This document shows, piece after piece, positions 23,745-58,979 of a DNA stretch of 64,000 nt (within the stretch, counting starts at the first letter, position 1; every line of letters starts with the position of its first letter). The position numbers and the translations under genes are program-made. Source of the stretch: Macrostomum lignano (taxonomy: Eukaryota); contig NIVC01000103.1 of assembly GCA_002269645.1 (NCBI GenBank), positions 310,001 through 374,000 of the forward strand, written 5' to 3'. The notes beneath the pieces were generated by a model that saw nothing but the letters and a program-made list of their open reading frames with translations, ran no database searches and was not told the origin of the DNA.

Positions 23745-24270
23745 ATAGCTTGGAGATTCCCAACAAGCTTGGGGATTCCCAACAAGATTTAGAGATTCTG
23801 GGGTAGCATGGAAATTCTCATGTAGCTTCAGAAATCCTGGGTAGCTTAGGGATTCCTATGTAGCTTAGGAATTCCTGTATAGCTTGAGGATTCCTATGTA
23901 GCTTGGGGATTCCTGTATAGCTTGGGGATTCCTGTATAGCTTGAGGATTCCTATGTAGCTTGGGGATTCCTGTATAGCTTGGGGATTCCTGTATAGCTTG
24001 AGGATTCCTGTATAGCTTGAGGATTCCTGTATAGCTTGGGGATTCCTGTATAGCTTGGGGATTCCTGTATAGCTTGGGGATTCCTGTATAGCTTGAGGAT
24101 TCCTGTATAGCTTGGGGATTCCTGTATAGCTTGGGGATTCCTGTATAGCTTGGGGATTCCTGTATAGCTTGGGGATTCCTGTATAGCTTGGGGATTCCTG
24201 TATAGCTTGGGGATTCCTGTATAGCTTGGGGACTCCTATGTAGCTTGGGGATTCCTGGGAATCCTGAGTC
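23745..24270. repeat. 19-bp array TATAGCTTGGGGATTCCTG
   Basis: About 27 copies starting just after the exon 3 donor. Confidence 0.95.
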
Positions 24271-24282
24271 CTGAAAGCTCAC

Positions 24283-24433
24283 CAAACTCGACTCCTCCGC
24301 TGTCGCTGCTGACCGCAGAAGCCGCAGTGGCAGGAGGCCTCAGGCTGAGCAGCAGCATCCGATGCGACACGCGCAGGAACACCTCCCCGGCCATGAAGGC
24401 GTCCCAACCGGCCCGGTGCGCGGCCGCCCACGA

Positions 24434-24471
<38 letters not shown>

Positions 24472-24907
24472 TGGTCGCCGAGGACTCGGCCAGGCCCAGC
24501 TGCCTGATTGTCGGCGCCGAGCCCGCGCCGCCGGCGGCGTCCAAAGCCGTCAGAGCGTCGCGCGCCTCCTCCAGCGAGCCGATAGGCAGCGAATTGAATT
24601 TGCACGCGCTGCGAAACTCGTACAGCAGGTGCTTCGTGTCCCACACTAGCGGGGTCAGCCGGTGGAAACTCTCCGCTTTCCAAGCCTCGTAGTCAACTGG
24701 CAGCGGCCTGTAGAAGTACTCGTACATGGCCAGCAAGTCTAGGAAGCAGTTGTGCCCGACCAGCGGCTTGCGCAGGTTCACCAGGGCGCGGAACACCCGC
24801 GAGAAGCCGACGCAGCGGAGCGCAAACGATTCGGTCTCGGCGACATCGTCTGAGGCGCCGACAACGGCGGCCGAGGTGGAATCCTGCTTTGAAGCGATTG
24901 ATGATAC
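24283..24907 (-). CDS. PNLDC1: PNLDC1 exon 3 (second half of the CAF1/DEDDh nuclease domain)
   Basis: KPLVGHNCFLDLL, WDTK and HRAGWDAF catalytic motifs; acceptor CAAAG, donor G/GTGAG; (GGC)n poly-Gly tract. Confidence 0.93.
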
Positions 24908-24967
24908 CTTTGTTTGTAGAATTTTTAATAGCATCAGACTAATTGAACTTATATTGCGCGGCCCATC

Positions 24968-25170
24968 CAAGGACTGGGAGGGTCGCTACACACAGCCTCA
25001 ATTACCCCAGCTACTGCTGGTAACCCTTTTTACAGCTGGGTGAACTGAAGCAATGCAGAGTTAAGTGTCCGACCGCAGCTCATGGACACAAATTGTTCCG
25101 AGTGGATCGAGAATCGAACCCCCGACCTTTCAGTCGCGGGTTCGACACTTTAACCTCTAGGCTACAAGCC
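24968..25170 (-). mobile_element. tRNA-derived SINE copy in PNLDC1 intron 2
   Basis: On the minus strand: A-box TAGCCTAGAGG, B-box GGTTCGATTCT, then the shared core. Confidence 0.85.
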
Positions 25171-25574
25171 CTGGTCCTAGGTGAAAAAGCGTCCTAGTGT
25201 CACTAGCGTCGCCCCAGAGTATCTGAGTCGTGCCAGAGTCGCTGTAGAATCACAGGAGTTGCGTCTTAAGCGCATTTCGCATTTATAACACAACTCTATT
25301 TAGTCTACTTGAGTCAGTAGACAGCTAAGCGCTAGTGACTCAACAGTCGCTTCTCCACCATCTCTACAGTTGTTTGAGCGTTAAAAGGTCACAAGAGTGG
25401 TTCCAGAATCGCTAGAGTCACTAGTGAGTTGTTTGCAATGACTTTTCAGCGATTCTTGTCACCGTAACGTTTTCAACGGGTTGCGTAGGTGTCACAGGGT
25501 GCCTTATTAATAACGGTTGCTTTGAGTCCTAGCATGTCATTTACTGTTTCCCTGTGTTCTCTTTCTCACTCTCT

Positions 25575-25876
25575 CCCCCAATTCCCAGCTCCCCCATTTT
25601 CCATCTCACTCTCCTCCCGAATTCCCAGCTCCCCCATTTTCCATCTCACTCTCCTCCCGAATTCCCAGCTCCCCCATTTTCCATCTCACTCTCCTCCCCA
25701 ATTCCCAGCTCCCCATTTTCCATCTCACTCTCCTCCCCAATTCCCAGCTCCCCCATTTTCCATCTCACTCTCCTCCCTAATTCCCAGCTCCCCCATTTTC
25801 CATCTCACTCTCCTCCTGAATTCCCAGCTTCCCCATTTTCCATCTCACTCTACCTCTCCCCCTTTCCCTCTATTCC

Positions 25877-25932
<56 letters not shown>
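25575..25932. repeat. 40-bp pyrimidine-rich array followed by (CT)n
   Basis: About 7 copies of CTCCCCCATTTTCCATCTCACTCTCCTCCCGAATTCCCAG. Confidence 0.9.
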
Positions 25933-25937
<5 letters not shown>

Positions 25938-26201
25938 CTCTATTTTCTCTCCCACACTCTCTCCCTCCCTCTACCTCTCCCTTTCCCTCTACCTTTCCCC
26001 CTCTCTCCCTCTTACTTTAACCCCCCGATCCCTCTACCTCTACTCCAGCATTTAACGTATTTTCGCTACATGTTGGTAGTTGATTCTATAGAAGCTTAAT
26101 GTGAATTACTTAATTTCATATCGGCAGTTAGCCTATACACAGACGAGATTTAAAGGACAACTCAGAGCAGTAATTATAACTAGCTCTTTAAAGCTAATCA
26201 C

Positions 26202-26475
26202 CTGACGCTGGCGCACCACCCACAGCACGCATCCGTCTGGCTGAATCGTGTCGGCAGCGGCAGCTTCAGCTCTGCAGTAGCCATCGCCAGTCTGTCCCAG
26301 GTTGCCACCAACGGGCGGCTCGCAGCGCAGCAGCAGCTGGCAACCATCGGCCGGCCGTTGTAGGCGAGCGGCCAGGGCCACCCGAACGCCTAACGAGCTG
26401 ACGCAGCCGATGCGGCGGACAGGGATTCGAACCTCGGCAGACGGGTCCGGGGCGGCCGACAGCAGACCGGAGATT
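26202..26475 (-). CDS. PNLDC1: PNLDC1 exon 2 (divergent middle region; boundaries chosen by phase)
   Basis: GC-rich open frame; acceptor GTCAG (phase 2) and donor CAG/GTGAT (phase 0) join exons 1 and 3 in frame; no strong motif. Confidence 0.65.
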
Positions 26476-26644
26476 CTGACGCGGTCGAGCGGATATATTT
26501 TTAGTTGCTTTGGCTATATTTAGAGCTTGATTGGTATTTAAGTAGCTTAGAGAGTTGAATGTGCTTCGAGATTAAAGAGGCTTTAAGATTTTTAAAATAA
26601 AGGGTTTTGAAGAGCTTTGGGATTCTCTGGTCCCAGAGAAAACG

Positions 26645-26905
26645 GTAGATTAGGGATTTGGAAGGATTGAGAATACACAGGTAGATTAGGGATTTGGAAG
26701 GATTAAGAATATACAGGTAGATTAGGGAGTTGGGGGATTAGGAATATACAGGTAGATTAGGGAGTTGAGGGATTAAGAATACAGTAGATTAGGGAGTTGG
26801 GGGATTAGGAATATACGGGTAGATTAGGGAGTCGGGGGATTAGGATTATACGGGTAGATTAGGGATTTGGAAGGATTAGGAATACACAGGTAGATTAGGG
26901 AGTTA
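26645..26905. repeat. About 35-bp array GGTAGATTAGGGAGTTGGGGGATTAGGAATATACA in PNLDC1 intron 1
   Basis: About 7 copies. Confidence 0.9.
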
Positions 26906-26938
26906 GATCCCAGGGAATTAAAAAGACTAAGACCTCAC

Positions 26939-27462
26939 CTCTCAGCCTCGGCAGCCAGTTCGCATTCATCAGCGGCGCCAAGCGGTTCAACGCCGGTGCC
27001 GCCAGAGCCACCGCCGGCATTCAATAGACGCCGAAGCTGCGCCTCCTGCGCCTCATTCAAATAGTACACGCCGCAGTCCACCACCCGGTTCAGGTCCAGG
27101 CCGTGGCGCCTCAGGAACTCCAGGCTGGCCGCCGTGCAGACGAACTCCCTGCCCAGCGGCTCGAACGCGGCCGGATACAGCGGGACATTGAACACGCGAG
27201 CCTCCCACTGATTGTCGAAGCCGCCGCCGTCGCCGACTGAAACCCGACGGAATGCGGCCAGGCCGAATTCCAGCACGGCGCTCTGGCGCAGAGCGGCGCG
27301 GCACTTGGCGTAGCGCTCGGCGGGGGTGTCGAAGAAGCTTCGCCTGGCCGAGGCTGTCTCGATGCCCGTGTACTCGCCGTCTATGGCGACAAAGTCGGCC
27401 GAAGAGATCGAGTCCAGAATCGTTGCCAGGTCGGATTCGAAACTCTGCCGGGTCACCTCCAT
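26939..27462 (-). CDS. PNLDC1: PNLDC1 exon 1 (poly(A)-specific ribonuclease-like, piRNA Trimmer family)
   Basis: MEVTRQSF...ADFVAIDGEYTG (catalytic D and E), FFDTPAERY, LEFGLAAF, SLEFLRRHGLDLN, GVYYLN; donor AG/GTGAG. The full 5-exon model is 1860 nt, 619 aa. Confidence 0.92.
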
Positions 27463-31078: not shown

Positions 31079-31836
31079 CTTTTATCCAGTTTCACAAGCC
31101 GGTCAAGGCAGAGGCTGAGGTCAACCCGCCGAGCGCGAATATCGCGGATGCTGTGATGGGAGCGCAGGTAATCCGTAGTGACCACTAGCAACGGCAGCTG
31201 CTTATCAATAACGCCGGGCTCGTCAAGCGCCTTCGGCCAAGGAGTGCACAGGTGCTTAATAGCGGCGCAGTGAGCTGCCACGTGAGCCGGCGTCAGGTGT
31301 AGAAAATTCGGCACCTTAATCAGCTCCGTGTTGCCCCATTTATTCGGCGATATGCCCGCATTCTCCGTTGCATTGTTGGGCCGGCCCTGGCGCACCGGCA
31401 GCGGCACCGCGGCCGGGTGGAAGGTGCGCGCCGTCGGCCAGACGCTCGGCCAGCTGCTGTGCGCCGGCTTCATCCGGTCGCAGCGCGGCGTCAGCGGGTG
31501 CCGGCTGCGAAGGAGCGGCGGCTTCGCTGCCTCCTTGGTGAGGCCGGGCACCACCAGGGAGCGAAAGCCGGCGGTGTTGGAGGCAGCGGCAGCGGCGGCC
31601 ACGTCGGCCGCGGAGTAGCCGGCAAACCCGGCGCGTCGGGAGCTGGCGCCGCGGCGCCCCGACACCGAGGCAGCTCCGGCGTCGTCGACGCCGCCTTCGC
31701 CGATGCTCCAGACGTCGGAGGAGTTCGAAGAAGATGAATTTGAATAGCCGGCGGCTGCCAGGCTGTGGTTGCTAGGGGCGGCTAGCAACCGCCTGGCCAA
31801 GCCGGACAGGAGCAGCAGTTTGCCAGTTGGCGTCAT
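31079..31836 (-). CDS. MRPS35: MRPS35 exon 1 with a mitochondrial-presequence-like N-terminus
   Basis: WPSVWP...FHPAAVPLPVRQG, ELIKVPNFLHLTP, CTPWP, TDY...RARRV; MTPTGKLLLLSGLARRLL is Arg/Leu-rich with no acidic residues; donor AG/GTTTC, phase 2. Confidence 0.93.
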
Positions 31837-34025: not shown

Positions 34026-34421
34026 CTACAACTGAGACTGAGTGTGAAATCCCAAGCCAAACATGGAGGTGACAAAGGTGCAGAACAGGGACCAGAACAG
34101 GCCGTAGCTGAGCAATCCGCCGGCTGTCTGAGGCGAAGCCAACGATCTGAGCTCGTCAACTCGGCTAGTAAGATCGGCCACTAGTGGATCATCTGTGTAG
34201 GCTTTCAGCCAATCAGGCAGGGCGTTCCACGTGGACGTATTTGATTGGCTGGTAGCGTTGGCCCTGGCCAGATTGTACAGAGGCAGGTGGCCGGACAGTC
34301 TGCCAGAGTCCCAGCTGCAGCCGGACAGGGTCTTGTACATCAGGGCCAGGAACAGCGTGACAGCCAGCGGGCACAGGTACTGCAGAGATATCACGCCAAG
34401 GAACCGGTTCACGTTGGACAC
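34026..34421 (-). CDS. TMEM161: Transmembrane protein 161, last exon
   Basis: VISLQYLCPLAVTLFLALMYKTLSGCSW and LLSYGLFWSLFCTFVTSMFGLGFH match the TMEM161 C-terminus; acceptor TGCAG. Confidence 0.92.
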   Translation of the reverse strand: MSNVNRFLGVISLQYLCPLAVTLFLALMYKTLSGCSWDSGRLSGHLPLYNLARANATSQSNTSTWNALPDWLKAYTDDPLVADLTSRVDELRSLASPQTAGGLLSYGLFWSLFCTFVTSMFGLGFHTQSQL

Positions 34422-35430: not shown

Positions 35431-35574
35431 CTGCTCCTGCAAATCCCGATTGCTAATCCGTCCGGCCTCGCGATTCAGTCTGGCCAATCGAGTTGAAGCC
35501 GAGTGCAGAAACGCCTGCAGATGGCCGGGCATGCAGACCAGACGGAGCAGGCACAGCAGCAGCACGGCGTACAC
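35431..35574 (-). CDS. TMEM161: TMEM161 exon 3
   Basis: LCLLRLVCMPGHLQAFL...LNREAGRISNRDLQEQ; CATCAG acceptor, CAG/GTAGG donor, 48 codons. Confidence 0.92.
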
Positions 35575-36073: not shown

Positions 36074-36736
36074 CTGCACGGTGCACAAATCCACCGCCGT
36101 GATGCCGCGACGCACGGGAACAAACCAGGTGAGCAGACAGCCCAGCGGAGCATAGAAACTAAGATGATGCAGCAGCAGGGTCAGCCGCCGACTCATCGTG
36201 TCCATCAGTCCGGCGGCCGAGTCCGTCTCCAGACAGGCGGTGTCCGGACTAACCAGATCCCAGTACACTCGCGAATGCCGTATAGCCGAGAAAGTGACCA
36301 AGGCTCCATAGAACCCGCCAATCAGTACTAAACAAGCTCGGAGCACCTGGTTATCTGACAGAGGCGGCGAGTCCAGCCCCAGCTGCAGCACTGTGGGCGG
36401 CAGCACCAGCACGCCCATAGACATGACCGTGTAGAAAAATGCAAATGTAACCAACAGTACAAACTCGGACGCATTAGCGGAGTACAGGCGAACAATGGAT
36501 AGCAAGCCTTTGAGAGCAAAGCCAACGCCAAGGCAGCACCACACTAGGGACAGATTGGTTCTGTCACTTTTGCCGCCATTCAATGCGCCGTAGTAGAACT
36601 CCGTGATGCCGTACACAATGCAGGCAATCAGGCTGAAGTCCAGCAGCCACTGCCAGTCCGAGTAAAAGTGCAAATCTCGCAGGTCCAGCTCAGTCTGTCG
36701 GGTGCTCACCAGCGGGATGCGAACCGATTTGGCCAC
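36074..36736 (-). CDS. TMEM161: TMEM161 exon 2
   Basis: LHFYSDWQWLLDF, NLSLVWC, GALVTFSAIRHSRVYWD; CTCCAG acceptor, CAG/GTTGG donor, 221 codons. Confidence 0.93.
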
Positions 36737-36774
36737 CTGGAGCAGCGAGTGCAGGGAATTCTTTAGAAACATGT

Positions 36775-37400
36775 CCAGTTTGAGTTGGCCTTCTCCCAAC
36801 TCCTCCCTCAGAGGCCTGTCTGTCCAGTTTGAGCTGGCCTTCTACCAAACCCTCCTTCAGAGGCCTGTCTGTCCAGATTGAGTTGGCCTTCTACCAAACC
36901 CTCCTTCAGAGGCCTGTCTGTCCAGTTTGAGCTGGCCTTCTACCAAACCCTCCTTCAGAGGCCTGTCTGTCCAGTTTGAGCTGGCCTTCTACCAAACCCT
37001 CCTTCAGAGGCCTGTCTGTCCAGATTGAGTTGGCCTTCTACCAAACCCTCCTTCAGAGGCCTGTCTGTCCAGATTGAGTTGGCCTTCTACCAAACCCTCC
37101 TTCAGAGGCCTGTCTGTCCAGTTTAAGCTAGCCTTCTCCCAACTCCTCCTTCAGAGGCCTGTCTGTCCAGTTTGAGCTGGCCTTCTACCAAACCCTCCTT
37201 CAGAGGCCTGTCTGTCCAGTTTGAGTTGGCCTTCTACCAAACCCTCCTTCAGAGGCCTGTCTGTCCAGTTTGAGCTGGCCTTCTCGACCCCAAACCCTCC
37301 TTCAGAGGATTGTCTGTCCAGCTTGAGCTGGCCTTCTCCCAACTCCTCCTTCAGAGGTCTGTCTGTCCAGTCTGAACTGGCCTTCTCCCAAACCCTCCTT
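36775..37400. repeat. 49-bp array GAGGCCTGTCTGTCCAGTTTGAGCTGGCCTTCTACCAAACCCTCCTTCA filling TMEM161 intron 1
   Basis: About 12.5 copies. Confidence 0.96.
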
Positions 37401-37421
37401 CTTCTCTCACGCTCAACCCAC

Positions 37422-37613
37422 CAGAAATACTCCATCTCGATCTGTTTTCGGCGACTTTTTAATATTAGCCGCCTCCGCTATTGTCCGATCGCTGGGCGGT
37501 TTGAAACGGCGCAACGATAGCAGCACACGGCGGCCGAGCGAGTAGTGCCGGCTGATGGTGGACAGCACCGACGCTGACACCAGGGTGACGACCAGCTGGA
37601 AGCCAAACACAGC
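37422..37613 (-). CDS. TMEM161: TMEM161 first conserved coding exon (no ATG of its own)
   Basis: AVFGFQLVVTLVS matches the conserved MAV(L/I)G(I/V)QLVVT N-terminus; starts directly after acceptor TTGAAG; donor CTG/GTGGG, 64 codons. Confidence 0.9.
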
Positions 37614-37774
37614 CTTCAATGCGGGCGGGCGGGGAGGAATGCAATTGAGGAGCGATTAGTAGACGGAAATTAAAAAAATGATCTACGTCTAGCTACTCAA
37701 ATATAAAATTAAAGCATTGTCGAAGGTAACCTAAGAACAGACTGAAGATCTGTGAAGGTGGCGAGTCGCGACCC

Positions 37775-38500
37775 AACACCTGAGTTTCTGGAAGGGTGGA
37801 TGGAGGCTCAACACCTGAGTATCTGGGAGTGGCGGGTGGGGGCTCAACACCTAAGGATCTGGGAGTGGTGGATGGGGCTCAACACCGGAGGATCTGAGAG
37901 TGGCGGGTGGGGGCTCAGCACCTGAGGATCTGGGAGTGGCGGGTGGGGGCTCAGCACCTGAGGATTTGGGAGTGGCGAGTGGGGGCTCAGCACCTGAGGA
38001 TCTGGGAGTGGCGGGTGGGGGCTCAACACCTGAGGATGTGGGAGGATGGCAGCTCAACACCTGAGTATCTGGGAGTGGTAGATGGAGGCTCAACACCTGA
38101 GTATCTGGGAGTGGCGGGTGGGGGCTCGGCACCTGAGGATCTGGGAGTGGCGGGTGGGGGCTCGGCACCTGAGGATCTGGGAGTGGCGGGAGGGGACTCA
38201 ACACCTGAGGATGTGGGAGGATGGCAGTTGCTCAACACCTGAGTATCTGGGAGTGGCGGGTGGGGGCTCGGCACCTGAGGATCTGGGAGTGGTAGATGGA
38301 GGCTCAACACCTGAGTATCTGGGAGTGGCGGGTGGGGGCTCGGCACCTGAGGATCTGGGAGTGGCGGGTGGGGGCTCGGCACCTGAGGATCTGGGAGTGG
38401 CGGGTGGGGGCTCGGCACCTGAGGATCTGGGAGTGGCGGGAGGGGCTCAACACCTGAGGATGTGGGAGGATGGCAGTTGCTCAACACCTGAGGATCTGAT
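37775..38500. repeat. 36-bp G-rich array CTCGGCACCTGAGGATCTGGGAGTGGCGGGTGGGGG
   Basis: About 20 copies between MRPS21 and TMEM161. Confidence 0.95.
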
Positions 38501-38719
38501 GGGGTCTGATGGGCTTACGCCACGAATATAAATTGGAATAACTCGAGTAAAAAGCTTTAAGACAAGCATTTCTTGCATGACAGAAGACTAATTGTCTCCT
38601 AATTATATTTATTACATTTATAAGCTAAGTTCTAACAAACTTGCACAGATTTGCACGAATCAAATATGAATATGAATTTAGTCAGACACAAGCACTAAGT
38701 AGCATCATCAGTCAGTTGG

Positions 38720-39016
38720 TTATCGAGGCCAAGGCGAAGGCCTGTTCGTTCGCATTAGAAACTTGATCTTCCTGGCCATCTCGGCGTCGTAAACCCGCTT
38801 GCAGCGCTCGTAGATGACTCGTCTGCGCCATTTGTCCGGCGTCTCGTAGTAGATCTGGCTGTTGAACGATTTCACGTAGCCGTCCTTGGATAAAATGCGT
38901 TGCAGTCCGTTGAACGACAGCTCAAGACCGCCATTGGCCTGGTCCATCACTTTGACGCTGCGTTGAAGGAATTTGAAGTTGCGAAAGTATTGATCGGGTG
39001 ACAGGCGTCCTGCCAT
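38720..39016 (-). CDS. MRPS21: Mitochondrial ribosomal protein S21 (bS21m), single exon, 98 aa
   Basis: FKFLQRSVKV...LQRILSKDG...YYETPDKWRRRVIYERCKRVYDAEMARKIKFLMRTNRPSPW matches YYEKP...[28 protein letters not shown]. Confidence 0.95.
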   Translation of the reverse strand: MAGRLSPDQYFRNFKFLQRSVKVMDQANGGLELSFNGLQRILSKDGYVKSFNSQIYYETPDKWRRRVIYERCKRVYDAEMARKIKFLMRTNRPSPWPR

Positions 39017-39134
39017 GCTTGATGCTAAATTGGCAGCAACAGGGAAATAGCTTTAATAATTGAAATATCAAGACATTCTTTGACAACAGGATAACGTTGC
39101 TATCATGCTATTAAAGCATCCTAAGCTCTAAATA

Positions 39135-44360: not shown

Positions 44361-46053
44361 GGGACATAGGAAGAAGCAGAGGTAGAGGCCAGAGTTTGCT
44401 TGACATTCTAGGCAGCACCCCAGTTAATAATTTCAATATTTGCCACAAATCCTAATTTTACATGAATGTACTCTATTTTATTTTTAGCTCTATCCTAAAT
44501 TACTAACTATTAATAAGTTTTTGTTTAAGTAGGCCTATGACTTCCGATTGTAGAATACACGCAAAAATAGTTCCAGGGATTGGAGTTCCCTGGGTTCAAA
44601 ATCTGCGGGTTTCAACAGCTTGTGTATTATAATTTAGTTGTCATGAAAACAAGTAGATCATTATTGAAATAGGACTGTGAAAATAAGCACTACCAAACTA
44701 GAACTATTTAATTCAAAATCTAATTAAAAATAATGATCATTCTATATCTCTATAAACTCCAAAAATGCATTTTTTAGCTAAAATGATTTTTAGTTCAAAT
44801 TTACTGAATATTGCTGGTATTTAATTGTTATAATTCCTTGGCTTAAGCATAATTGCTAGGCTACCTAGGCTTAGGCCTAGCCAAAAGTGTAGGCCTATAA
44901 TTCATCATATAGAAATTTCACTGTATTTTGCTTTTTGTAGGCCTAGTAAGAATATTCAGACTCAAATTATATTAGGGCCTAGGACTTAATTATTAAGCTC
45001 TTGACATTATTTTTAGGGCCTAGGTCTATTTTATTAAACAAGGCTAGGCCTAAATTTTGCTAAATTTGCATTGCCCATATAAAATTGTTACATGTTGGGT
45101 AGCGATGCCAATATCCATGGCATAAGCATAATGTGTTGCACAGGCAGCACAGCCAAAATAGGCCTAATACAGAAATTATGTAAGTATAGGTATAGCCTAG
45201 GCCTAGTCGACTCCTAGGCGAAGTCCAACTCCAAGTGATCTCTGTATCATTGACAAAGCTTGCGAGCTAGGCCTACCTTACTTTATTATGTTTACTGGTG
45301 CCAGTGCTAGCTAGCTTATAGTTATATACCTTCAATATTTACTGTTTTGAGTCTTTTGACCTACTAAGATGATTGCAAGCAAGCAAGCAAGTAAATATAA
45401 AACTGAATTGCTGTGTAGTACACCTTAATTTCGTAATTTAAATTGGTGCCAACTCGAGGCGTGTGTTAAGTAAAGCAAAGTAATCGCATAGCAATGTAAT
45501 AATACACGTATATTTTCGTTTCGTTCAATACTTTATATTCGTAACTTTATATCAGCTGAATTTCATCGCCTTAGCTCGATGGTGAGTCCAATAAATGCTG
45601 AATCATAGCTCGAACTGTTACTGGCCATGCTTTAGAGTGTGCCTAGTAAGCAGGCAGCTGTGCAAGCTTGTGATTGGGCGGTCAAGGCTCAAAGTCAAAT
45701 TTAGTGTCCTGCCTCCGTTCCTGTTACATTTGGCGACCACGCCAGGACGAATTTCTTCATAGCATAAAAGACCGAAGGTTGCACCTGTCATCGATCATCA
45801 TGTGGTCAGAACGTGAGGCAGAAGAGCCTCAACGGCTAAGACTGAGAAATCGCGATATTTTACGTCCGACCGCTGCGGCTACGGCTTACACCTCTTCGTC
45901 AACCAGTGAGCCAGAATCCGAACGGGAGGCGAACTGGCGGCGCTATCAAGAGCTTCGTGACCTCGATCCTGTGCAAATCTCTGTCGATGAAGCACGCTGC
46001 TGTCAGTCTCAAGTGCCAGTGCCCCCGGGCCCGGCCAACCGTCAACGAACTAC

Positions 46054-47112
46054 ATGGCGACGGGAGACTCATTCCTGCTGGACACCAGGCCTTCCGCGGC
46101 AGCTGCGGCAGCTGCAGTGACACATCCACCAAGACCCTCTGTGCACCGTATGGCCGAACCATGGGCTCCGTTGCTCCAAGGCGGATCTCACCCTGGCGCT
46201 GGCGACCGCAACCTGTGCGCACCGGTATATCAACAAGCAATCCAGCTTCCGTCGGTGCCGAAGCCGGCGCCCTTCAACGGATCCGAACCGTTCGATGACT
46301 TTCTGGGTCGAGTGTCTTCGTATTTAAGCCGGCACCAAGGACTGAGTGACTACAGCAAGATCAACACGCTCAGCAGTTACCTGGGACCAGCATTCGCTAC
46401 CTACGAGGTCTGGCTCTACCAACTGTGCGCGCAGCATGGACAGCCCGTTGGGACTTCACTGCAGTTCCTGCCAGGTGCCCGCTATGAAGATCTCCTGCAG
46501 CACCTTCGCGCTCGTCATGGCGGTGCCACCAGCACTGCGCTACTTCGGCGCGAGCTTCACAGTCGGTGCCGGGGCAGGGACGAGAGGTTCGAGGATTTTC
46601 TGACTGCCCTCCAGCGACTCGCGTTCAAGGCCTACCCAGAGCTCGGTGCTCAAGACTGTCGCCAGCAGACTGTGCTTGAGCGGTTCATTCAAGGGCTGAA
46701 CGACAACTACGTGACGGAGCGGCTGCTTAATATGCAGCTGCCTCTTACTACACCGGATCAGGCCCTGCATTATGCCCAGCAAGTGCGCGAGACCCGGCAG
46801 ATAATGAATTCCCAGTCGCAGCACCACAGCGCCGAGGCGTCAGCTCCAGCGGCACCGGTTCAGTCAACACCGACAGGAACCCGACCGCAGCATGGGCCAC
46901 AGACGACACAACATCACCAGCCAGCGGCTCATCGAGCGCAGACAGCCCCAGCGCCACCATGGAGATCAGCTGACGCCGCTGCACATCAACAGCAGCAGCC
47001 TAGGGCGGTGCCCATCTGCTACGGCTGCCATCAGCCTGGCCACATCCGCCGGAGGTGCCCAAACGCTGGGGGGGCTGGTCCAATGGGCCAGCACCGGCCC
47101 TCTCAGCACTAA
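46054..47112 (+). CDS. gag: Gypsy Gag with a CCHC zinc knuckle
   Basis: FNGSEPFDDFL, Q...E.FEDF...LQRLAFKAYP, ERFIQGL and CYGCHQPGHIRRRC; exact start codon uncertain. Confidence 0.93.
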   Translation: MATGDSFLLDTRPSAAAAAAAVTHPPRPSVHRMAEPWAPLLQGGSHPGAGDRNLCAPVYQQAIQLPSVPKPAPFNGSEPFDDFLGRVSSYLSRHQGLSDYSKINTLSSYLGPAFATYEVWLYQLCAQHGQPVGTSLQFLPGARYEDLLQHLRARHGGATSTALLRRELHSRCRGRDERFEDFLTALQRLAFKAYPELGAQDCRQQTVLERFIQGLNDNYVTERLLNMQLPLTTPDQALHYAQQVRETRQIMNSQSQHHSAEASAPAAPVQSTPTGTRPQHGPQTTQHHQPAAHRAQTAPAPPWRSADAAAHQQQQPRAVPICYGCHQPGHIRRRCPNAGGAGPMGQHRPSQH

Positions 47113-50100
47113 ACAGTTCGGCCCAGCCCCCACGCCCCAGCTGCCAGCCCGACCAAGTGCGCTTCATCACCTCGCGCATGCTCAGAAAACGCCGGCCGTG
47201 CATGATCGACACCGGTGCCGAGATCTCCTGCATCAACGGCGACATCGTGCACTCGGCCAGGCTCAGACGGCAGCTGAGACCCAGCTCAACAACCATCTAT
47301 GGCGTGGGCGGCAATCAAGCAACAGTGCTGGGCGAAATTGAGATAAGTTTTTTTCTTGGTCCGCTTCATTTTCGACACAGATTCCTGGCAGTGACCTGCC
47401 TCAGCGCACCGGTAATTCTGGGCTGCGACTTCCTAAACAAATTTGACATTTCGATTCACCTGAGATCAGGCATTCTCGAGTTCAACGGCCTCGGCGTCAC
47501 CTTGCCAATGCGGACATCCAGGCAGGCGGCCCAGACTTGCAAGCTGGCAGCGGCAGCCACGGTTCGACTGCAGCCAGGCGATGGCTGGATCATTCCGGTG
47601 CGGCCAGCGAGCGCGGCAGCGTGGACGAACTCGGAGGCACCAGGCGTTGTCTGCGGCAGCAAGGCGGCCAAAGTGATGATCGGCCGCAGCGTGTCCAAGC
47701 TGGTTGACCACGGAATGGGGGTTGCTGTCATCAACACCAGAGATGAGACAGTCGAGATCAAGGAGGGCGACATCGTCGGCAACTTCAACCCGCTGTCTGG
47801 CCGAGCCCTGGCGCACCTGCAAGCCGGAGGATCTGGTGATGCCAGCGAGGCAGATCCGACTACTGCAACGACCTGGCAGGACGAGGTGCAAATCGCCGAT
47901 GACATCCCAACCGAGGAGCGGCAGCAAGTCGAACGCCTTCTGCTGGAGTTCAGTGACGTATTCGCGAGCCCCAGCAACCCAGGCCGCACCCAATTGTTAA
48001 AGCACGAGATCGACACAGGCAACGCCAGGCCAATTCGCCAAGGACTGCGGCGCCTGGCTCCCACAGCGATCGCACAGCAGAAGGAGCTGGTCAACGAGAT
48101 GCTGGCAAAGGGAGTCGTCCGACCATCGTCATCACCTTGGGCATCTCCGATAGTTCTGGTTCGCAAGAAGGACGGGTCGGCCAGATTTTGCTTGGACTAC
48201 CGCCTGCTGAACGCGGTGACCAAGCCCGATGCCTTCCCGATGCCCCGCATCGATGACACTCTGGATGCCCTCGAAGGAAACAGCTACTTCTCAGCGCTGG
48301 ATCTCGAAAGTGGCTACTGGCAAGTCGAGATGAATGACCGAGACAAGGAGAAGACGGCATTTGTGTGCCATGAAGGCCTGTTTGAATTCAACGTGATGCC
48401 GTTCGGACTCCGGAATGCACCAGCCACCTTTCAGCGGCTCATGCAGCTGGTGCTCCGGGGGCTGACGTGGCAGGCCTGTCTGGTGTTCATTGACGACGTC
48501 ATCGTGATGGGCCAGACCATCGGCCAGCACAACGATCGGCTGCGTTCAGTTCTGGAGCGACTGCGCGAGTTTAACCTGCGCCTCAAGCCGTCAAAGTGCC
48601 GATTTGCAAATACCAGCATGTTAGTCCTGGGCCACCGCGTCAGCAAGACCGGCATCACCGTCGATGAGGGCAAAACCGCGGCTGTGCGAGACTGGCCGGT
48701 GCCCCGGAGCTCGAAGGACGTCAAGAGCTTCCTCGGCATGACCTCCTACTACCGAAGATTTGTGCGCGAATACGCCAATATCGCCGAGCCTCTGCGCCGC
48801 CTTACACTGCCTACGCCCTTCGAGTGGACGCCAGAAGCCGAGGCGGCCTTCAACCAGCTGAAGCAAGCGCTGCTGTCAGCTCCGATCCTGGCGTTCCCGG
48901 ACATGAGCGAGTCGGGCTCCGAATTCATCCTCGACACCGACGCAAGTGACTGCGCAATCGGCGCGGTGCTGTCGCAAGTGCAGGCGAGCGAAGAGCGGGT
49001 TATCGCCTACGCCAGCCGCGCCCTGTCAAGAGCTGAGCGCAACTACTGCGTGACGCGGCGCGAGCTCCTGGCTGTTGTCGAGTTTGTTAAGAAGTTCCGG
49101 AGCTACCTGCTGCCGCGCGCCTTCACCGTTCGAGTGGATCACCAGGCGCTCACCTATCTGCTGGCATTCAAAGAGCCCGAAGGCCAGCTGGCCAGATGGC
49201 TGCAGCTGCTCGATGAGTTCAACTTCAAGGTCGTCTTTCGCCGAGGCCGCCAACACGGCAACGCAGACGCCCTCTCTCGGCGAGAGCAAAAGTGCACCAG
49301 CCAGTGTCGAGTCTGTCGGCCAGGGACGACAGCGGTGGCGCCAGCCGAGACTTCAACAGCCGCCTGCCAGACGGAGCCGACGGTCGAGGCGCCAGTGCCA
49401 ATCGCGGAGCCTGCTGGCCGGGTCGACACAGTCAGAGTCAACTCCGTGCAAACCAACGCAGCGACATCAGCGCCGGCTACCTCTGCGGCTGCCCAGACCA
49501 ACGCCGAGCCGGAACGTCAGGGCACCTCAAGGCGGAAGCAGCAGCTTCAACCGCGGCCAAGCGAGAGCGAGGACTCCAGCGAAGACGAAATCAGCGACGA
49601 GGCCATTCAGGAAGGCGAGGCGCTGTCAGATGCGTCTCAGTCACTGCGTGAACTGCAGCTCCGTGATCCAGACATCGGCCCGGTGTTTCGCCTGCTGTCC
49701 AACGGCAAGACAAGGTTCAGCGCCAGCAGACGTGACCGACTGTCGCCTGAGAGCCTAATTCTGGCACAGAAGATCGGCGACCTGTGTTTCGTCGACGGCG
49801 CCCTGAACAAGCTGGTGAAGTCCAAGCCTGTGCCTGTGATTCCGCGCTGCAGACAGGAGGAGTTCATCGAGGAGGTCCATGAGCTTGGGCATCTGGGCGA
49901 GGACAAGACCTTGGCAGCCCTCAAGCAGCGTTGCTACTGGCCGAAAATGGCGGAGAGCGTTCGCCTAGCGGTCAGGTCCTGCCAAGTGTGCCAGCGCGCT
50001 AAGACACCGAGTCAGCGCCGAGCTCCACTGCAGACTATGGCCAGTGGATTTCCTATGCAGCGCGTGGGCATCGACGTGGTCAAAGTTGGACTGTCACGGC

Positions 50101-50993
50101 GGGGAAACGATCGGCTGCTCACCATTGTCGACTACTTCACCAAGTGGGTCGAGCTGGTGCCACTCCCCGACGAGAAAGCGGCCACCATCGCCAAGGCACT
50201 GTTCGACAACTGGGTGACGCGTTTCGGAGCCCCGCACATTCTGCACTCCGACCGTGGCAAGGCCGTGGACGGAAAGGTCATCAGGAGCCTGTGCCGGCTG
50301 CTGGAGATTCAGAAGACGCGGACATCCGGCTACCATCCGCAGTGCGACGGCCTAGTAGAAAGGTTCCACCGCACTCTGCACCAGATGCTCCGCTGCCACC
50401 TGCAGTCAGTTCAGCCGGAGGACTGGGAAGAAGTGCTGCCGCATTGTCTCCTGGCCTACCGCAGCAGCGTCAATGCTACAACCGGGTTTACTCCTCACTG
50501 CCTGCTGACTGGCCGGGAAATGACGCTTCCAGTTGACGTCGTCTACCGGCCACCGGAGCCGCCAATGACAGTCGGCCAGTTCGCCGCCAACAACCGCGAC
50601 CAGCTGCTTCGCGCCTACGACTCCGTGCGGCGATCGATGGCGACGGCACAACGACGCCAGCGGCGGTACTACGACCGGAAGGCCAAGCGGTGCAGATTCC
50701 GGGTCGGCGACCTCGTATGGGTTTTCGTTCCGCCGTCGGCGCTTTCAAGGACGACTGGACTGGCTCCGAAACACCAGGCGCCCTGGACCGGCCCGTTCCG
50801 GGTGCTGCAGCGAACGTCGCCGGTGAACTACCTGGTTCGTCCTATCGATTACAAGGACGGCGACACCGGTCGGGTGGTCCACGCAAACAAGCTGAAACGT
50901 GCGCACCAGCCCCGCGCTCCCGACCCGGCGCGGAGTGAGGCGACCAGCGACTGCAGCAGCGAAGTTCTTGACGATGGCTGGGTCCTAGTGTGA
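47055..50993 (+). CDS. pol: Gypsy Pol (protease, RT, RNase H, integrase with GPY/F), in the -1 frame relative to gag
   Basis: IDTGAEIS; WASPIVLVRKKDG, LDYRLLN, MPFGLRNAPATFQR, FIDD; LDTDASDCAIGAVL; HELGH...CQVC, FTKWVE, LHSDRG, QCDGLVERFHRTL; PWTGPFRV; no stops. Confidence 0.97.
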   Translation: MPKRWGGWSNGPAPALSALNSSAQPPRPSCQPDQVRFITSRMLRKRRPCMIDTGAEISCINGDIVHSARLRRQLRPSSTTIYGVGGNQATVLGEIEISFFLGPLHFRHRFLAVTCLSAPVILGCDFLNKFDISIHLRSGILEFNGLGVTLPMRTSRQAAQTCKLAAAATVRLQPGDGWIIPVRPASAAAWTNSEAPGVVCGSKAAKVMIGRSVSKLVDHGMGVAVINTRDETVEIKEGDIVGNFNPLSGRALAHLQAGGSGDASEADPTTATTWQDEVQIADDIPTEERQQVERLLLEFSDVFASPSNPGRTQLLKHEIDTGNARPIRQGLRRLAPTAIAQQKELVNEMLAKGVVRPSSSPWASPIVLVRKKDGSARFCLDYRLLNAVTKPDAFPMPRIDDTLDALEGNSYFSALDLESGYWQVEMNDRDKEKTAFVCHEGLFEFNVMPFGLRNAPATFQRLMQLVLRGLTWQACLVFIDDVIVMGQTIGQHNDRLRSVLERLREFNLRLKPSKCRFANTSMLVLGHRVSKTGITVDEGKTAAVRDWPVPRSSKDVKSFLGMTSYYRRFVREYANIAEPLRRLTLPTPFEWTPEAEAAFNQLKQALLSAPILAFPDMSESGSEFILDTDASDCAIGAVLSQVQASEERVIAYASRALSRAERNYCVTRRELLAVVEFVKKFRSYLLPRAFTVRVDHQALTYLLAFKEPEGQLARWLQLLDEFNFKVVFRRGRQHGNADALSRREQKCTSQCRVCRPGTTAVAPAETSTAACQTEPTVEAPVPIAEPAGRVDTVRVNSVQTNAATSAPATSAAAQTNAEPERQGTSRRKQQLQPRPSESEDSSEDEISDEAIQEGEALSDASQSLRELQLRDPDIGPVFRLLSNGKTRFSASRRDRLSPESLILAQKIGDLCFVDGALNKLVKSKPVPVIPRCRQEEFIEEVHELGHLGEDKTLAALKQRCYWPKMAESVRLAVRSCQVCQRAKTPSQRRAPLQTMASGFPMQRVGIDVVKVGLSRRGNDRLLTIVDYFTKWVELVPLPDEKAATIAKALFDNWVTRFGAPHILHSDRGKAVDGKVIRSLCRLLEIQKTRTSGYHPQCDGLVERFHRTLHQMLRCHLQSVQPEDWEEVLPHCLLAYRSSVNATTGFTPHCLLTGREMTLPVDVVYRPPEPPMTVGQFAANNRDQLLRAYDSVRRSMATAQRRQRRYYDRKAKRCRFRVGDLVWVFVPPSALSRTTGLAPKHQAPWTGPFRVLQRTSPVNYLVRPIDYKDGDTGRVVHANKLKRAHQPRAPDPARSEATSDCSSEVLDDGWVLV

Positions 50994-52311
50994 GTCTGAC
51001 AATCTTTTTTGCCGATTTCTGCGACCTGCGCAGTTTGTGCTTGAGTTGTGCATTTGTGCGCTGTTCCAGCAGAGCTGCCTTTGCGTGTCACTTGGCTGAG
51101 TATTTTTTGCGTTTAATTCGTTTTTAAGATTCAAATCCGCTGTCTTTTCGAGTTTTAATCAGTTGTGGTTTCCGAGTTCCAGGCCGGTGCTTTATATATT
51201 CCCTTATATATTAAATCGCATTTTGCTATCAAAATATTTATTTTCGATTTCAACAATATTTTCTAAATTCAAAAAAATTGGTAAATTTTCGCGTTGAAGT
51301 GAATATTGCATTTTTATTCCGCATTGACATAATTGTTCGATTTTTAGCATCCGTTAGGGTATGTGCGTTGATCATCATCCGATATTCTATTGAATTAGAC
51401 TCGAGCATTTTCGTTCCGCGTTAGGTTCAAACTGCATTGGTGAAGTTCTAAATTGCTGTGGTTGAAGAATTTTGCCGCTATTTTTGAAGTTGGCTTTTAA
51501 CTTTTGCTCATACGCGATTCGATCCTTTAGTGTCCGTCTTGTGAGCGTGCATTGAACGCAACTTGTATTGTGTCAAAGAAATATTTTCATAAAGTAGATT
51601 TTGTTCGAACTGTCAATTTTCAGCGCAATGGGGACATTGTTTTTTTTTCGCGAGGGGGTAGTGTAGTACACCTTAATTTCGTAATTTAAATTGGTGCCAA
51701 CTCGAGGCGTGTGTTAAGTAAAGCAAAGTAATCGCATAGCAATGTAATAATACACGTATATTTTCGTTTCGTTCAATACTTTATATTCGTAACTTTATAT
51801 CAGCTGAATTTCATCGCCTTAGCTCGATGGTGAGTCCAATAAATGCTGAATCATAGCTCGAACTGTTACTGGCCATGCTTTAGAGTGTGCCTAGTAAGCA
51901 GGCAGCTGTGCAAGCTTGTGATTGGGCGGTCAAGGCTCAAAGTCAAATTTAGTGTCCTGCCTCCGTTCCTGTTACAGCTGGTTGTTTCAAATCGCAAAGA
52001 TTAACAGTTTCGGTTAATTAGTTTAAACAAAACTTTACCAGGTAAAGAAAGTTTTGCCAGCGGAGTGCCTTCAGTTAATGTGAGGCAGATTATTTGCTAA
52101 CTATTAAACGCTTAATTTAGGCGGTTTTAATGCTACAGCAATAAAAAATTAGCAGAGATGCTGTTGGATTATTCAACCCTAGCTCGTCGGGTCGTAATTT
52201 ATCTACAATTCAGGTTCCTTTCACGCCGCCAAAATGAGGTCAAACTTCGAGTAGCTAAACACTCGATTGCATTGATAATGAATGTACAGCAGTCTTGTTG
52301 TCTATACTGTT

Positions 52312-57989: not shown

Positions 57990-58890
57990 TCAGGTGCTCC
58001 TCCCTTCTGCCATTTCTTTTTTTCTGGGCTGGCACCATAAGCAGGACATAACACTCATTGCGGCGTCTCCAGACACAACACTCATTGCGGCGTCTCCAGA
58101 CACAACACTCATTGCAGCGTCTCCAGACACAACACTCATTGCGGCGTCTCCAGACACAACACTCATTGCGGCGTCTCCAGACACAACACTCATTGCGGCG
58201 TCTCCAGACACAACACTCATTGCAGCGTCTCCAGACACAACACTCATTGCGGCGTCTCCAGACACAACACTCATTGCGGCGTCTCCAGACACAACACTCA
58301 TTGCGGCGTCTCCAGACACAACACTCATTGCGGCGTCTCCAGACACAACACTCATTGCGGCGTCTCCAGACACAACACTCATTGCGGCGTCTCCAGACAC
58401 AACACTCATTGCGGCGTCTCCAGACACAACACTCATTGCGGCGTCTCCAGACACAACACTCATTGCGGCGTCTCCAGACACAACACTCATTGCGGCGTCT
58501 CCAGACACACTCATTTTGGCGCTTCCTGACACAACGCTCATCTCGACGCCTCCTGACAGACTTATCTCGTCGCCTCCTGACAGACTTATCTCGTCGCCTC
58601 CTGACACACTCATCTTGTCGCCTCCTGACACACTCATCTTGTCGCCTCCTGACACACTCATCTCGGCGCCTTCTGCCACAACACTCATTGCAGCGCCTTC
58701 TGACACACTCATCATGGCGCCTCCTGACACACTCATCTTGGCGACTTTGTTGGCTGGCTCTTCGTTTTCCTCGTCTTCAATATCGACGTCTGACTCTTCC
58801 AGCTGATGAGCGGGTTTTTGCTCGGGAAAGTGGTCGTAGTAGTTAATGCTTTTGACGGAGCGGTGTCCCAGCGAGTGTCCAAATACACAC
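57990..58890 (-). CDS. Putative last exon of the ankyrin gene (acidic segment followed by repeat-encoded MSVVSGDAA)
   Basis: An 89-nt AT-rich GT-AG intron at 58979-58891 (phase 2) joins into the frame GCVFGHSLGHRSVKSINYYDHFPEQK...EESDVDIEDEENEE; true end uncertain. Confidence 0.45.
58048..58745. repeat. 27-bp array (CTCATTGCGGCGTCTCCAGACACAACA) grading into a 24-bp variant
   Basis: About 17 clean 27-mers plus about 9 degenerate 24/27-mers. Confidence 0.96.
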
Positions 58891-58979
58891 CTAAAAGAGT
58901 GCCGTGGAGTTTTTTTTCGCAGGAATATTTAAATAATAGATTGAGCAAAATTAAAAGTTGATGGTTGAGAAATTTATAC

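What the first reader, a model, noticed from the sequence alone, without database searches (positions are those of the whole stretch)
37414..38620. TMEM161 may take its start codon from the spliced leader
Seen: the first conserved exon begins AG|GCT GTG TTT GGC TTC CAG (AVFGFQLVVT), exactly one Met short of the conserved MAV(L/I)GxQLVVT start. The nearest unique-sequence ATG (about 37716) is followed by CTT TAA. Known: flatworm spliced leaders end in AUG, which can serve as the initiator. Inference: SL addition at 37613 would give M-AVFGFQ precisely. A competing model is also visible: a 60-nt AT-rich exon at 38578-38519 (MQEMLVLKLFTRVIPIYIRG, donor GC/GTAAG) is in phase 0 and lies only about 30 nt past the MRPS21 AATAAA. 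Either model leaves no room for a separate promoter.
Basis: partly seen in the sequence, partly recalled or inferred. Interest (0 to 1): 0.72.

Follow-up and report, generated by a model that had tools for sequence, protein, structure and literature searches.

The report
TMEM161 start codon from spliced leader
In the flatworm Macrostomum lignano the TMEM161 gene has no start codon of its own and almost certainly gets its AUG from the trans-spliced leader, which is a correct reading but an ordinary case of a mechanism known in flatworms since 2006.

Summary
The window is Macrostomum lignano (Mlig_3_7, NIVC01000103.1). A four-exon, all-phase-0 TMEM161 gene (Pfam PF10268, E=6e-89) lies on the minus strand. 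Its first exon starts at 37613, directly behind an AG, and reads AVFGFQLVVT. In 30 of 48 homologues whose alignment reaches the N-terminus, a Met sits at position 1 directly before the residue that aligns with this Ala. The 14 open codons upstream contain no ATG. No ATG in the 1106-nt intergenic region is followed by GT. No other AG occurs in the 68 nt before the acceptor. The GenBank proteins of both homeologues are built from RNA-seq models that were cut at spliced-leader (SL) read peaks with the SL trimmed off. Both start at this base and are flagged partial. The published M. lignano SL ends in ATG, so SL addition gives M-AVFGFQ.

The rival 60-nt exon (38578-38519) is real sequence with a good GTAAG donor, but it looks non-coding. 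Its GC3 is 0.25 against 0.70 for coding sequence. Its codon score is below all 444 TMEM161 windows. No orthologue has a matching extension.

MRPS21 and TMEM161 meet the published operon criterion, but "no room for a promoter" is overstated. No SL-junction reads could be examined. This is a new member of a known kind; interest is low to moderate.

The parts
38720..39016 (-). MRPS21 (mitochondrial ribosomal protein S21) single-exon CDS with its own genomic ATG at 39016; the upstream gene on the same strand
   Evidence: Pfam PF01165 E=9e-07. The GenBank CDS begins 3 nt further upstream (SMAGR...). The homeologues carry the same CDS.
38607..38612 (-). AATAAA polyadenylation hexamer of MRPS21
   Evidence: Read directly. 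Identical in the homeologues. The cleavage site itself was not observed.
38519..38578 (-). Candidate 60-nt 'exon' (MQEMLVLKLFTRVIPIYIRG, donor GGC|GTAAGC); judged non-coding, and part of the MRPS21 3' flank or intercistronic RNA
   Evidence: the only phase-0 GTRAG option. GC 0.33 and GC3 0.25, against CDS GC3 0.70. Codon log-likelihood -16.2 bits, below all 444 TMEM161 windows and at the non-coding median. Identical in the homeologues, but so is the flanking UTR.
37774..38498 (.). 36-bp tandem array, 20.5 copies, filling most of the MRPS21-TMEM161 spacer; contains no ATG
   Evidence: TRF; ATG list. The homeologue has a longer array. Such arrays cover roughly 28% of the window.
37614..37773 (-). 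Unique 3' end of the presumed outron. Contains a 2-codon uORF (ATG 37717 CTT TAA), an in-frame stop TAA at 37658-37656, a C-rich pyrimidine tract at 37640-37621, and an AG-free zone from 37683 to the acceptor AG at 37615-37614.
   Evidence: 99% identical in the homeologue.
37422..37613 (-). TMEM161 exon 1: 64 codons, phase 0 at both ends, no Met codon; begins at codon 2 of the family
   Evidence: GenBank PAA90805.1 and PAA83691.1 start here. Homologue alignments run from query residue 1 to hit residue 2.
36772..37401 (.). 49-bp tandem array inside intron 1
   Evidence: TRF.
36074..36736 (-). TMEM161 exon 2 as used by the GenBank model. An alternative in-phase acceptor lies 24 nt upstream at 36760.
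35431..35574 (-). TMEM161 exon 3
34026..34421 (-). TMEM161 exon 4 including the stop codon

Best explanation
TMEM161 of Macrostomum lignano is an SL trans-spliced gene whose genomic copy lacks an initiation codon. The pre-mRNA is most likely a read-through from the MRPS21 promoter, that is, a two-gene operon. It is spliced at the 3' splice site AG|G at 37615/37613 to the 35-nt spliced leader, which ends in ...UUGCAUG. The leader's terminal AUG lands in phase 0 directly before GCU GUG UUU, so translation starts M-A-V-F-G-F-Q. That is the N-terminus TMEM161 proteins have across animals.

Shown here: the acceptor, the reading phase, the absence of any usable genomic ATG, the family register, and the fact that the published transcript-based CDS starts at this base.

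Inferred: that the 5' partner is the SL, that the SL AUG is the codon used, and that transcription comes from the MRPS21 promoter.
For: 1. Organism and SL. P0001 is PAA90805.1 of M. lignano, 98% identical to my model. It differs only in its exon-2 acceptor. The window maps to NIVC01000103.1. The SL is CGGTCTCTTACTGCGAAGACTCAATTTATTGCATG, and 30-39% of genes are trans-spliced (PMC8629364; PMC5730564).

2. Gene model. Four exons, all phase 0, all GT..AG; PF10268 E=6e-89.

3. Register. Query residue 1 aligns to residue 2 of the homologues. Of 48 N-terminus-reaching hits, 30 have M directly before that residue, and 5 more have an M there in longer models. The profile search gives the same picture.

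4. No genomic start.
- Exon 1 has no Met.
- Only 14 codons are open upstream, and they hold no ATG.
- The spacer has 6 ATGs in 1106 nt and none is followed by GT.

5. Splice-site anatomy. A pyrimidine-rich tract precedes the acceptor, and 68 nt before it are free of AG.

6. Published transcript evidence.
- The Mlig_3_7 annotation cuts transcriptional units at peaks of SL-containing reads after trimming the SL, then calls ORFs with TransDecoder (PMC5730564).
- The resulting GenBank CDSs of both homeologues begin at exactly this base and are flagged partial.
- A cis-spliced upstream exon would have extended the open frame unless it ended in a stop codon.

7. Precedent.
- All reported flatworm SLs end in ATG (PMC12582326).
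- In S. mansoni the SL AUG is in frame in 28% of trans-spliced transcripts and more than 40 cDNAs need it (Cheng et al. 2006, as summarised in PMC9851317).
- The final ATG is called a translation start codon for Macrostomum SLs in PMC10468722.

8. Operon layout. The genes share a strand. The distance from the PAS hexamer to the acceptor is 993 nt, of which 725 nt is tandem repeat, leaving about 268 nt repeat-adjusted. This is within the <1 kb criterion of PMC8629364.

9. The gene is live. Both homeologue ORFs are intact, with 7 synonymous and 4 non-synonymous codon differences.
Against: - No SL-junction read, cDNA or peptide could be examined. The collections held no M. lignano transcript contigs.
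- The acceptor is TTGAAG, not the most common [T/C]TNCAG trans-acceptor motif.
- The 'partial' flag is not diagnostic by itself. MRPS21 and the next gene downstream are also 'partial', yet their CDSs do not start behind an AG.
- A well-formed GTAAG donor with an in-phase ATG lies upstream in the same presumed pre-mRNA and could compete in cis.
- TMEM161 is named gene g1 of its transcriptional unit, so the published assembly did not physically join it to MRPS21.
Confidence: 0.85

Rival explanations
1. The start codon comes from a cis-spliced 60-nt first exon (38578-38519). This would give MQEMLVLKLFTRVIPIYIRG fused to AVFGFQ, with the tandem array lying in a 905-nt intron.
For: The ATG, the open frame, the phase-0 GGC|GTAAGC donor (which matches the GT[G/A]AG donor motif of PMC8629364) and a plausible intron length are all present. 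Tandem arrays also occur in real introns of this gene. Only 5-6% of shuffles give such a candidate.
Against: - GC3 is 0.25 against 0.70 in both neighbouring CDSs, and overall composition equals the MRPS21 3' UTR.
- The codon score of -16.2 bits is lower than every 20-codon window of TMEM161 and typical of non-coding sequence.
- No homologue has a corresponding extension; the Met sits directly before the Ala.
- The published transcript-based CDSs lack it.
- The ATG lies 28 nt after the MRPS21 AATAAA, about where cleavage is expected, so it would need a promoter inside the neighbour's 3' end.
- Identity between the homeologues carries no information, because the flanks are equally identical.
Confidence: 0.05
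2. There is no splicing at 37613. The mRNA starts in the unique 160 nt upstream and initiates at a near-cognate codon (for example TTG 37619-37617, as in the UniProt 'LKAVFGFQ' models). Alternatively, a distant upstream cis exon ending exactly in ATG is used.
For: UniProt A0A1I8GX96 and A0A1I8H5N7 read through the acceptor and begin LK. The frame is open for 14 codons. ATG|GT sites further upstream than MRPS21 were not searched.
Against: - The LK models are ab initio or older-assembly models without a start codon.
- The RNA-seq-based models of two homeologues end precisely at the AG.
- The AG-free zone and the pyrimidine tract are those of a used 3' splice site.
- The family N-terminus is M-A, not M/L-K-A.
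- A 2-codon uORF at 37717 would sit in such a leader.
Confidence: 0.05
3. Mixed use. The SL form is the productive mRNA, but a fraction of read-through MRPS21 pre-mRNA is cis-spliced from 38519 to 37613. This would give a bicistronic or chimeric MRPS21-TMEM161 transcript that contributes little or no TMEM161 protein.
For: A good donor and the acceptor lie in the same presumed precursor. Nearly 7% of the assembled M. lignano transcripts (transcriptional units) carry several trans-splice sites and are unresolved precursors (PMC5730564).
Against: No transcript model shows this form. Cleavage at the PAS about 90 nt upstream of the donor would separate it from the cap.
Confidence: 0.05

Closest known systems
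Flatworm mRNAs that use the spliced leader's 3'-terminal AUG as initiator (Cheng, Cohen, Ndegwa and Davis 2006, J Biol Chem 281:733; called 'slORFs' in PMC9851317)
   Same: The SL ends in AUG. The acceptor sits in phase 0 at codon 2. No genomic AUG is available. The conserved protein N-terminus is restored only by the SL Met.
   Different: The species is a free-living macrostomid, not Schistosoma, and the gene (TMEM161) is different. Use of the AUG has not been shown experimentally here. No systematic list of such genes for M. lignano turned up in the papers I searched.
SL-resolved operons of M. lignano (Ustyantsev and Berezikov 2021, PMC8629364)
   Same: The genes are adjacent on the same strand. 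The downstream gene starts at a trans-splice-type acceptor. The spacer is made mostly of tandem repeat, and the repeat-adjusted distance is about 270-380 nt, below their 1 kb threshold.
   Different: A polycistronic precursor is not shown. The published assembly names TMEM161 g1 of its own unit. Whether MRPS21 itself is trans-spliced is unclear, since its CDS does not start behind an AG.
TMEM161A/B family (Pfam PF10268, Tmemb_161AB)
   Same: Full-length match at E=6e-89, with the same N-terminal motif A-[VIL]-[FL]-G-x-Q-L-V and the same length class.
   Different: About 30-35% identity to animal orthologues. The start codon is not encoded in the gene. No other flatworm member was retrieved.

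Membership tests
SL-AUG-initiated trans-spliced mRNA (flatworm class of Cheng et al. 2006) | The organism's spliced leader ends in AUG | tested here: met
   The organism was identified as M. lignano. The SL sequence ending ...TTGCATG comes from PMC8629364. The window itself holds no SL RNA gene.
SL-AUG-initiated trans-spliced mRNA (flatworm class of Cheng et al. 2006) | The first exon of the mature mRNA starts at a 3' splice acceptor to which the SL is joined | tested here: inconclusive
   Shown: the acceptor AG, the pyrimidine tract and a 68-nt AG-free zone. The GenBank CDS of two homeologues starts at this base, from a pipeline that cuts at SL-read peaks (PMC5730564). The SL-junction reads themselves could not be inspected.
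SL-AUG-initiated trans-spliced mRNA (flatworm class of Cheng et al. 2006) | The SL AUG is in frame with the ORF, and no genomic AUG can supply the conserved N-terminus | tested here: met
   Phase-0 exon start. No Met in exon 1. No ATG in the 14 open upstream codons. Query residue 1 aligns to homologue residue 2.
SL-AUG-initiated trans-spliced mRNA (flatworm class of Cheng et al. 2006) | Translation actually initiates at the SL AUG | not testable with these tools
   This needs ribosome profiling, N-terminal proteomics or a reporter.
TMEM161 (PF10268) | Significant full-length match to the family profile | tested here: met
   E=6.2e-89, 299 bits against a cut-off of 27. 149 homologues at E<=1e-10.
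M. lignano SL operon (criterion of PMC8629364) | Adjacent genes on the same strand with a repeat-adjusted intergenic distance below 1 kb | tested here: met
   Stop codon to acceptor is 1106 nt. Subtracting the 725-nt array leaves 381 nt, or 268 nt measured from the PAS hexamer. The criterion is described.
M. lignano SL operon (criterion of PMC8629364) | The downstream gene is SL trans-spliced and both genes come from one polycistronic precursor | not testable with these tools
   Trans-splicing is inferred as above. No precursor transcript was available, and TMEM161 is g1 of its own unit.
Ordinary cis-spliced coding first exon (the 60-nt candidate) | Coding-type codon usage and conservation of the encoded residues in orthologues | tested here: not met
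   GC3 is 0.25 against 0.70. The log-likelihood of -16.2 bits is below all CDS windows. No orthologue has the extension.

The most novel reading that the evidence does not exclude
TMEM161 expression is gated entirely by trans-splicing. Neither the precursor nor any cis-spliced read-through form can be translated into TMEM161, so SL addition acts as an obligatory on-switch for a downstream operon gene. The same situation may lie behind many of the M. lignano proteins that databases list as 'partial'. A further, weaker possibility is that the intercistronic 36-bp minisatellite helps to process the operon. It carries about 20 copies each of a pyrimidine-rich CAG and a CAG|GTG motif on the transcribed strand.
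Probability: 0.1. Interest if true: 0.5.

Novelty: new member of a known kind. Interest (0 to 1): 0.27.

Why it matters
The value is mainly practical. The GenBank entries (PAA90805.1, PAA83691.1, flagged 'partial') and the UniProt entries (A0A1I8GX96 and A0A1I8H5N7, which start 'LK') misstate the N-terminus. The protein is most likely complete and begins MAVFGFQ.

The case also shows how SL-AUG genes can be recognised from genome sequence alone:
- an exon that starts in phase 0 behind an AG;
- a sequence one Met short of a conserved N-terminus;
- no ATG in the short open frame upstream.

A genome-wide count made this way in M. lignano would show how many genes depend on trans-splicing for translation. 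This matters for transgene and reporter design in this model animal. It does not change what is known about the mechanism.

Tried and rejected
- **Direct transcript evidence.** The complete 98-aa MRPS21 ORF is not on record. The protein clusters hold only NCBI and UniRef members. No M. lignano RNA contigs were therefore reachable.
- **Homeologue comparison of the spacer** (L001 and L004 against the window). The copies are 98-99% identical everywhere, the 60-nt candidate included, so the comparison cannot separate coding from non-coding sequence.
- **Other flatworm TMEM161 genes.** I wanted to see whether the missing ATG is ancient. The profile search returned no named flatworm other than M. 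lignano. Three unnamed Logan transcripts have their own ATG and no ...TTGCATG leader.
- **Gene identifiers** (Mlig012591, Mlig015014, Mlig034518) in papers and supplements: no hits.
- **Primary papers.** Wasik 2015 and Cheng 2006 are not held. Cheng 2006 is cited through PMC9851317 and PMC12582326.
- **SL RNA gene, tRNAs and Rfam families in the window:** none found.
- **The 'partial' flag as proof of SL.** I considered this and rejected it, because two neighbouring genes are 'partial' without starting behind an AG.
- **My first exon-2 acceptor** (36760) differs from the RNA-based model (36736). I adopted the latter.

Full report
**What is there**

The window is Macrostomum lignano. My gene model matches GenBank PAA90805.1 (BOX15_Mlig012591g1) at 98%; the only difference is the exon-2 acceptor. 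The encoding contig is NIVC01000103.1 of assembly GCA_002269645.1. The gene start at record position 357613 places the window at about 320001-384000 of that record.

A TMEM161 gene lies on the minus strand. It has four exons, all in phase 0 and all bounded by GT..AG:
- exon 1: 37613-37422
- exon 2: 36736-36074 (a second in-phase acceptor lies at 36760)
- exon 3: 35574-35431
- exon 4: 34421-34026

The product matches Pfam PF10268 at E=6e-89.

Upstream on the same strand is a single-exon MRPS21 gene (39016-38720, PF01165). Its AATAAA lies at 38612-38607. Between the two genes are 1106 nt. Of these, 725 nt (37774-38498) are a 36-bp tandem array.

**Check of the observation**

- Exon 1 begins GCT GTG TTT GGC TTC CAG directly behind AG 37615-37614 and encodes AVFGFQLVVT.
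- The ATG at 37717 is followed by CTT TAA.
- The 60-nt frame 38578-38519 encodes MQEMLVLKLFTRVIPIYIRG and ends in phase 0 at GGC|GTAAGC.

The claim about the family N-terminus also holds. In an exhaustive HMMER search, query residue 1 aligns to residue 2 of hit after hit. Of the 48 hits whose alignment reaches the N-terminus, 30 have their initiator M directly before that residue. Five longer models still have an M at that position. A profile search with named vertebrate, insect, mite, echinoderm and hemichordate proteins shows the same M-[AG]-[VIL]-[FLIM]-G start in 33 of 56 hits.

**No genomic start codon is available**

- Exon 1 has no Met codon.
- The frame is open for only 14 codons upstream (SLLNCIPPRPPALK, stop TAA at 37658-37656) and holds no ATG.
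- The whole spacer has six ATGs, and none is followed by GT. No exon could therefore end exactly in ATG.
- The next in-frame Met lies deep inside the protein, at about residue 180.

**The acceptor looks like a used 3' splice site**

A C-rich pyrimidine tract (37640-37621) precedes it. There is no other AG between 37684 and 37615. The hexamer TTGAAG differs at position -3 from the most common trans-acceptor motif [T/C]TNCAG. That motif is found at 44% of M. lignano SL sites (PMC8629364).

**Published transcript evidence**

The Mlig_3_7 annotation was built in several steps (PMC5730564):
1. SL-containing reads were extracted.
2. The SL was trimmed off.
3. The trimmed reads were mapped.
4. Transcriptional units were cut at the resulting peaks (the TBONE pipeline).
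5. ORFs were called with TransDecoder.

The SL is 35 nt long and ends in ...TTGCATG (PMC8629364). A gene whose Met comes from the SL must therefore appear as a 5'-partial CDS that starts at transcript base 1. That is what GenBank shows for this gene and for its homeologue on NIVC01000411.1. Both proteins start AVFGFQ at the base behind the AG and are flagged partial. If a cis-spliced exon lay upstream, the open frame would have been extended into it, unless that exon happened to end in a stop codon.

The flag alone proves nothing. MRPS21 (SMAGR...) and the next gene downstream are also 'partial', and their CDS starts are not behind an AG. What carries the weight is three things coinciding: the flag, the AG, and family codon 2.

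**The competing 60-nt exon**

It is structurally possible. It has a good GTAAG donor, would leave a 905-nt intron, and arrays also occur in intron 1. Only 5-6% of shuffles give such a candidate. But it does not look coding:
- GC is 0.33 and GC3 is 0.25. GC3 is 0.70 in both TMEM161 and MRPS21, and the MRPS21 3' UTR has GC 0.32.
- I built a codon log-likelihood score trained on other CDSs in the window. It gives -16.2 bits for the candidate. That is lower than every one of the 444 twenty-codon windows of TMEM161 (minimum -11.2, mean +7.6) and close to the non-coding mean of -14.8.
- No orthologue has an N-terminal extension of this kind.
- Its ATG starts 28 nt after the MRPS21 AATAAA, about where cleavage is expected.
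- It is identical in the homeologues, but so are the surrounding UTR and spacer, so this carries no information.

**Mechanism**

The most likely reading is this. The SL is joined at 37613, its terminal AUG becomes codon 1, and the protein starts MAVFGFQ.

This mechanism is established for flatworms.
- All reported flatworm SLs end in ATG (PMC12582326).
[quoted passage not shown] 2006, as summarised in PMC9851317).
- For Macrostomum SLs the final ATG is explicitly called a translation start codon (PMC10468722).

I put 0.85 on this explanation.

**Operon question**

The pair meets the operational criterion of PMC8629364: same strand, and a repeat-adjusted distance below 1 kb. Here that distance is 381 nt from the stop codon, or 268 nt from the PAS hexamer. 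That paper also notes that operon spacers are often swollen by repeats and that assembled units break there. This would explain why TMEM161 is 'g1' of its own unit.

'No room for a promoter' is nevertheless too strong. About 1.1 kb is available, and only about 40% of trans-spliced genes are assigned to operons.

**Is the gene functional?**

Both homeologue ORFs are intact. They differ at 7 synonymous and 4 non-synonymous codons. This is weak evidence, but it is consistent with constraint.

**What could not be done**

No M. lignano RNA contigs were reachable. No flatworm orthologue outside M. lignano was retrieved. The gene identifiers occur in no held paper or supplement. The SL junction itself is therefore inferred, not seen.

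**Verdict**

This is a further example of a known flatworm mechanism, in a species where about a third of all genes are trans-spliced by an AUG-ending leader. It is not a new kind of system. Its main value lies in annotation: the database N-termini are wrong or flagged incomplete. It also offers a simple sequence rule for finding more such genes.

Noticed in passing
window 39186, 36002, 35689, 34539 (also 26423, 25110, 20840): tRNA-derived SINE-like elements. A B-box-like GGTTCGATTCC (up to 1 mismatch) occurs 7 times against 0.76 expected. It has shared flanking blocks that are visible. ARAGORN and Rfam call none of them tRNA. Three copies sit in TMEM161 introns 2 and 3, and one sits about 170 nt upstream of the MRPS21 ATG.
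   Followed up: partly
window about 45990-51000, + strand: A Ty3/gypsy-type LTR retroelement with an uninterrupted 1329-codon pol frame (protease, RT, RNase H, integrase). It lies between an ankyrin-repeat gene (58736-64000, minus strand) and MRPS21. In homeologue L001 the ankyrin/kinase gene ends only about 7.8 kb upstream of MRPS21, so the insertion may be specific to this copy. The element was not printed or assembled.
   Followed up: partly
whole window: Roughly 18 kb of the 64 kb (about 28%) lies in tandem arrays with TRF score >=300, with periods of 3-49 bp (summed by hand). The arrays in the MRPS21-TMEM161 spacer and in intron 1 are therefore typical of this genome and not special to this locus.
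   Followed up: no
window 39016-39021; L001 8387; L004 10001: The GenBank MRPS21 CDSs are also '5' partial' (SMAGR... in two copies, STSMAGR... in a third). The annotated mRNA therefore starts only 3-9 nt before the genomic ATG and not behind an AG. This means either a very short leader or an imprecise 5' end. The third copy is named g2 of its transcriptional unit.
   Followed up: partly
window 31818-31836, minus strand (L002 15778-15796): The annotated CDS of the next gene downstream (421 aa, no Pfam hit) starts 18 nt after an in-frame genomic ATG (MTPTGK|LLLL) and not behind an AG. This looks like a 5'-truncated transcript model.
   Followed up: no
window 37614-37619: UniProt models A0A1I8GX96 and A0A1I8H5N7 begin 'LK' before AVFGFQ. 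They read through the acceptor (TTG AAG) and have no start codon.
   Followed up: yes
window 36736 and 36760, minus strand: Exon 2 has two in-phase acceptors 24 nt apart: AAG|AAT at 36760 and CAG|GTG at 36736. The RNA-based GenBank model uses 36736. Using 36760 would add NSLHSLLQ.
   Followed up: partly
window 24239-27462, minus strand: A CAF1-family (PARN-like) ribonuclease gene with its own ATG at 27462 follows on the same strand. MRPS21, TMEM161, the 421-aa gene and this gene form a co-oriented cluster separated by repeat-rich spacers.
   Followed up: no
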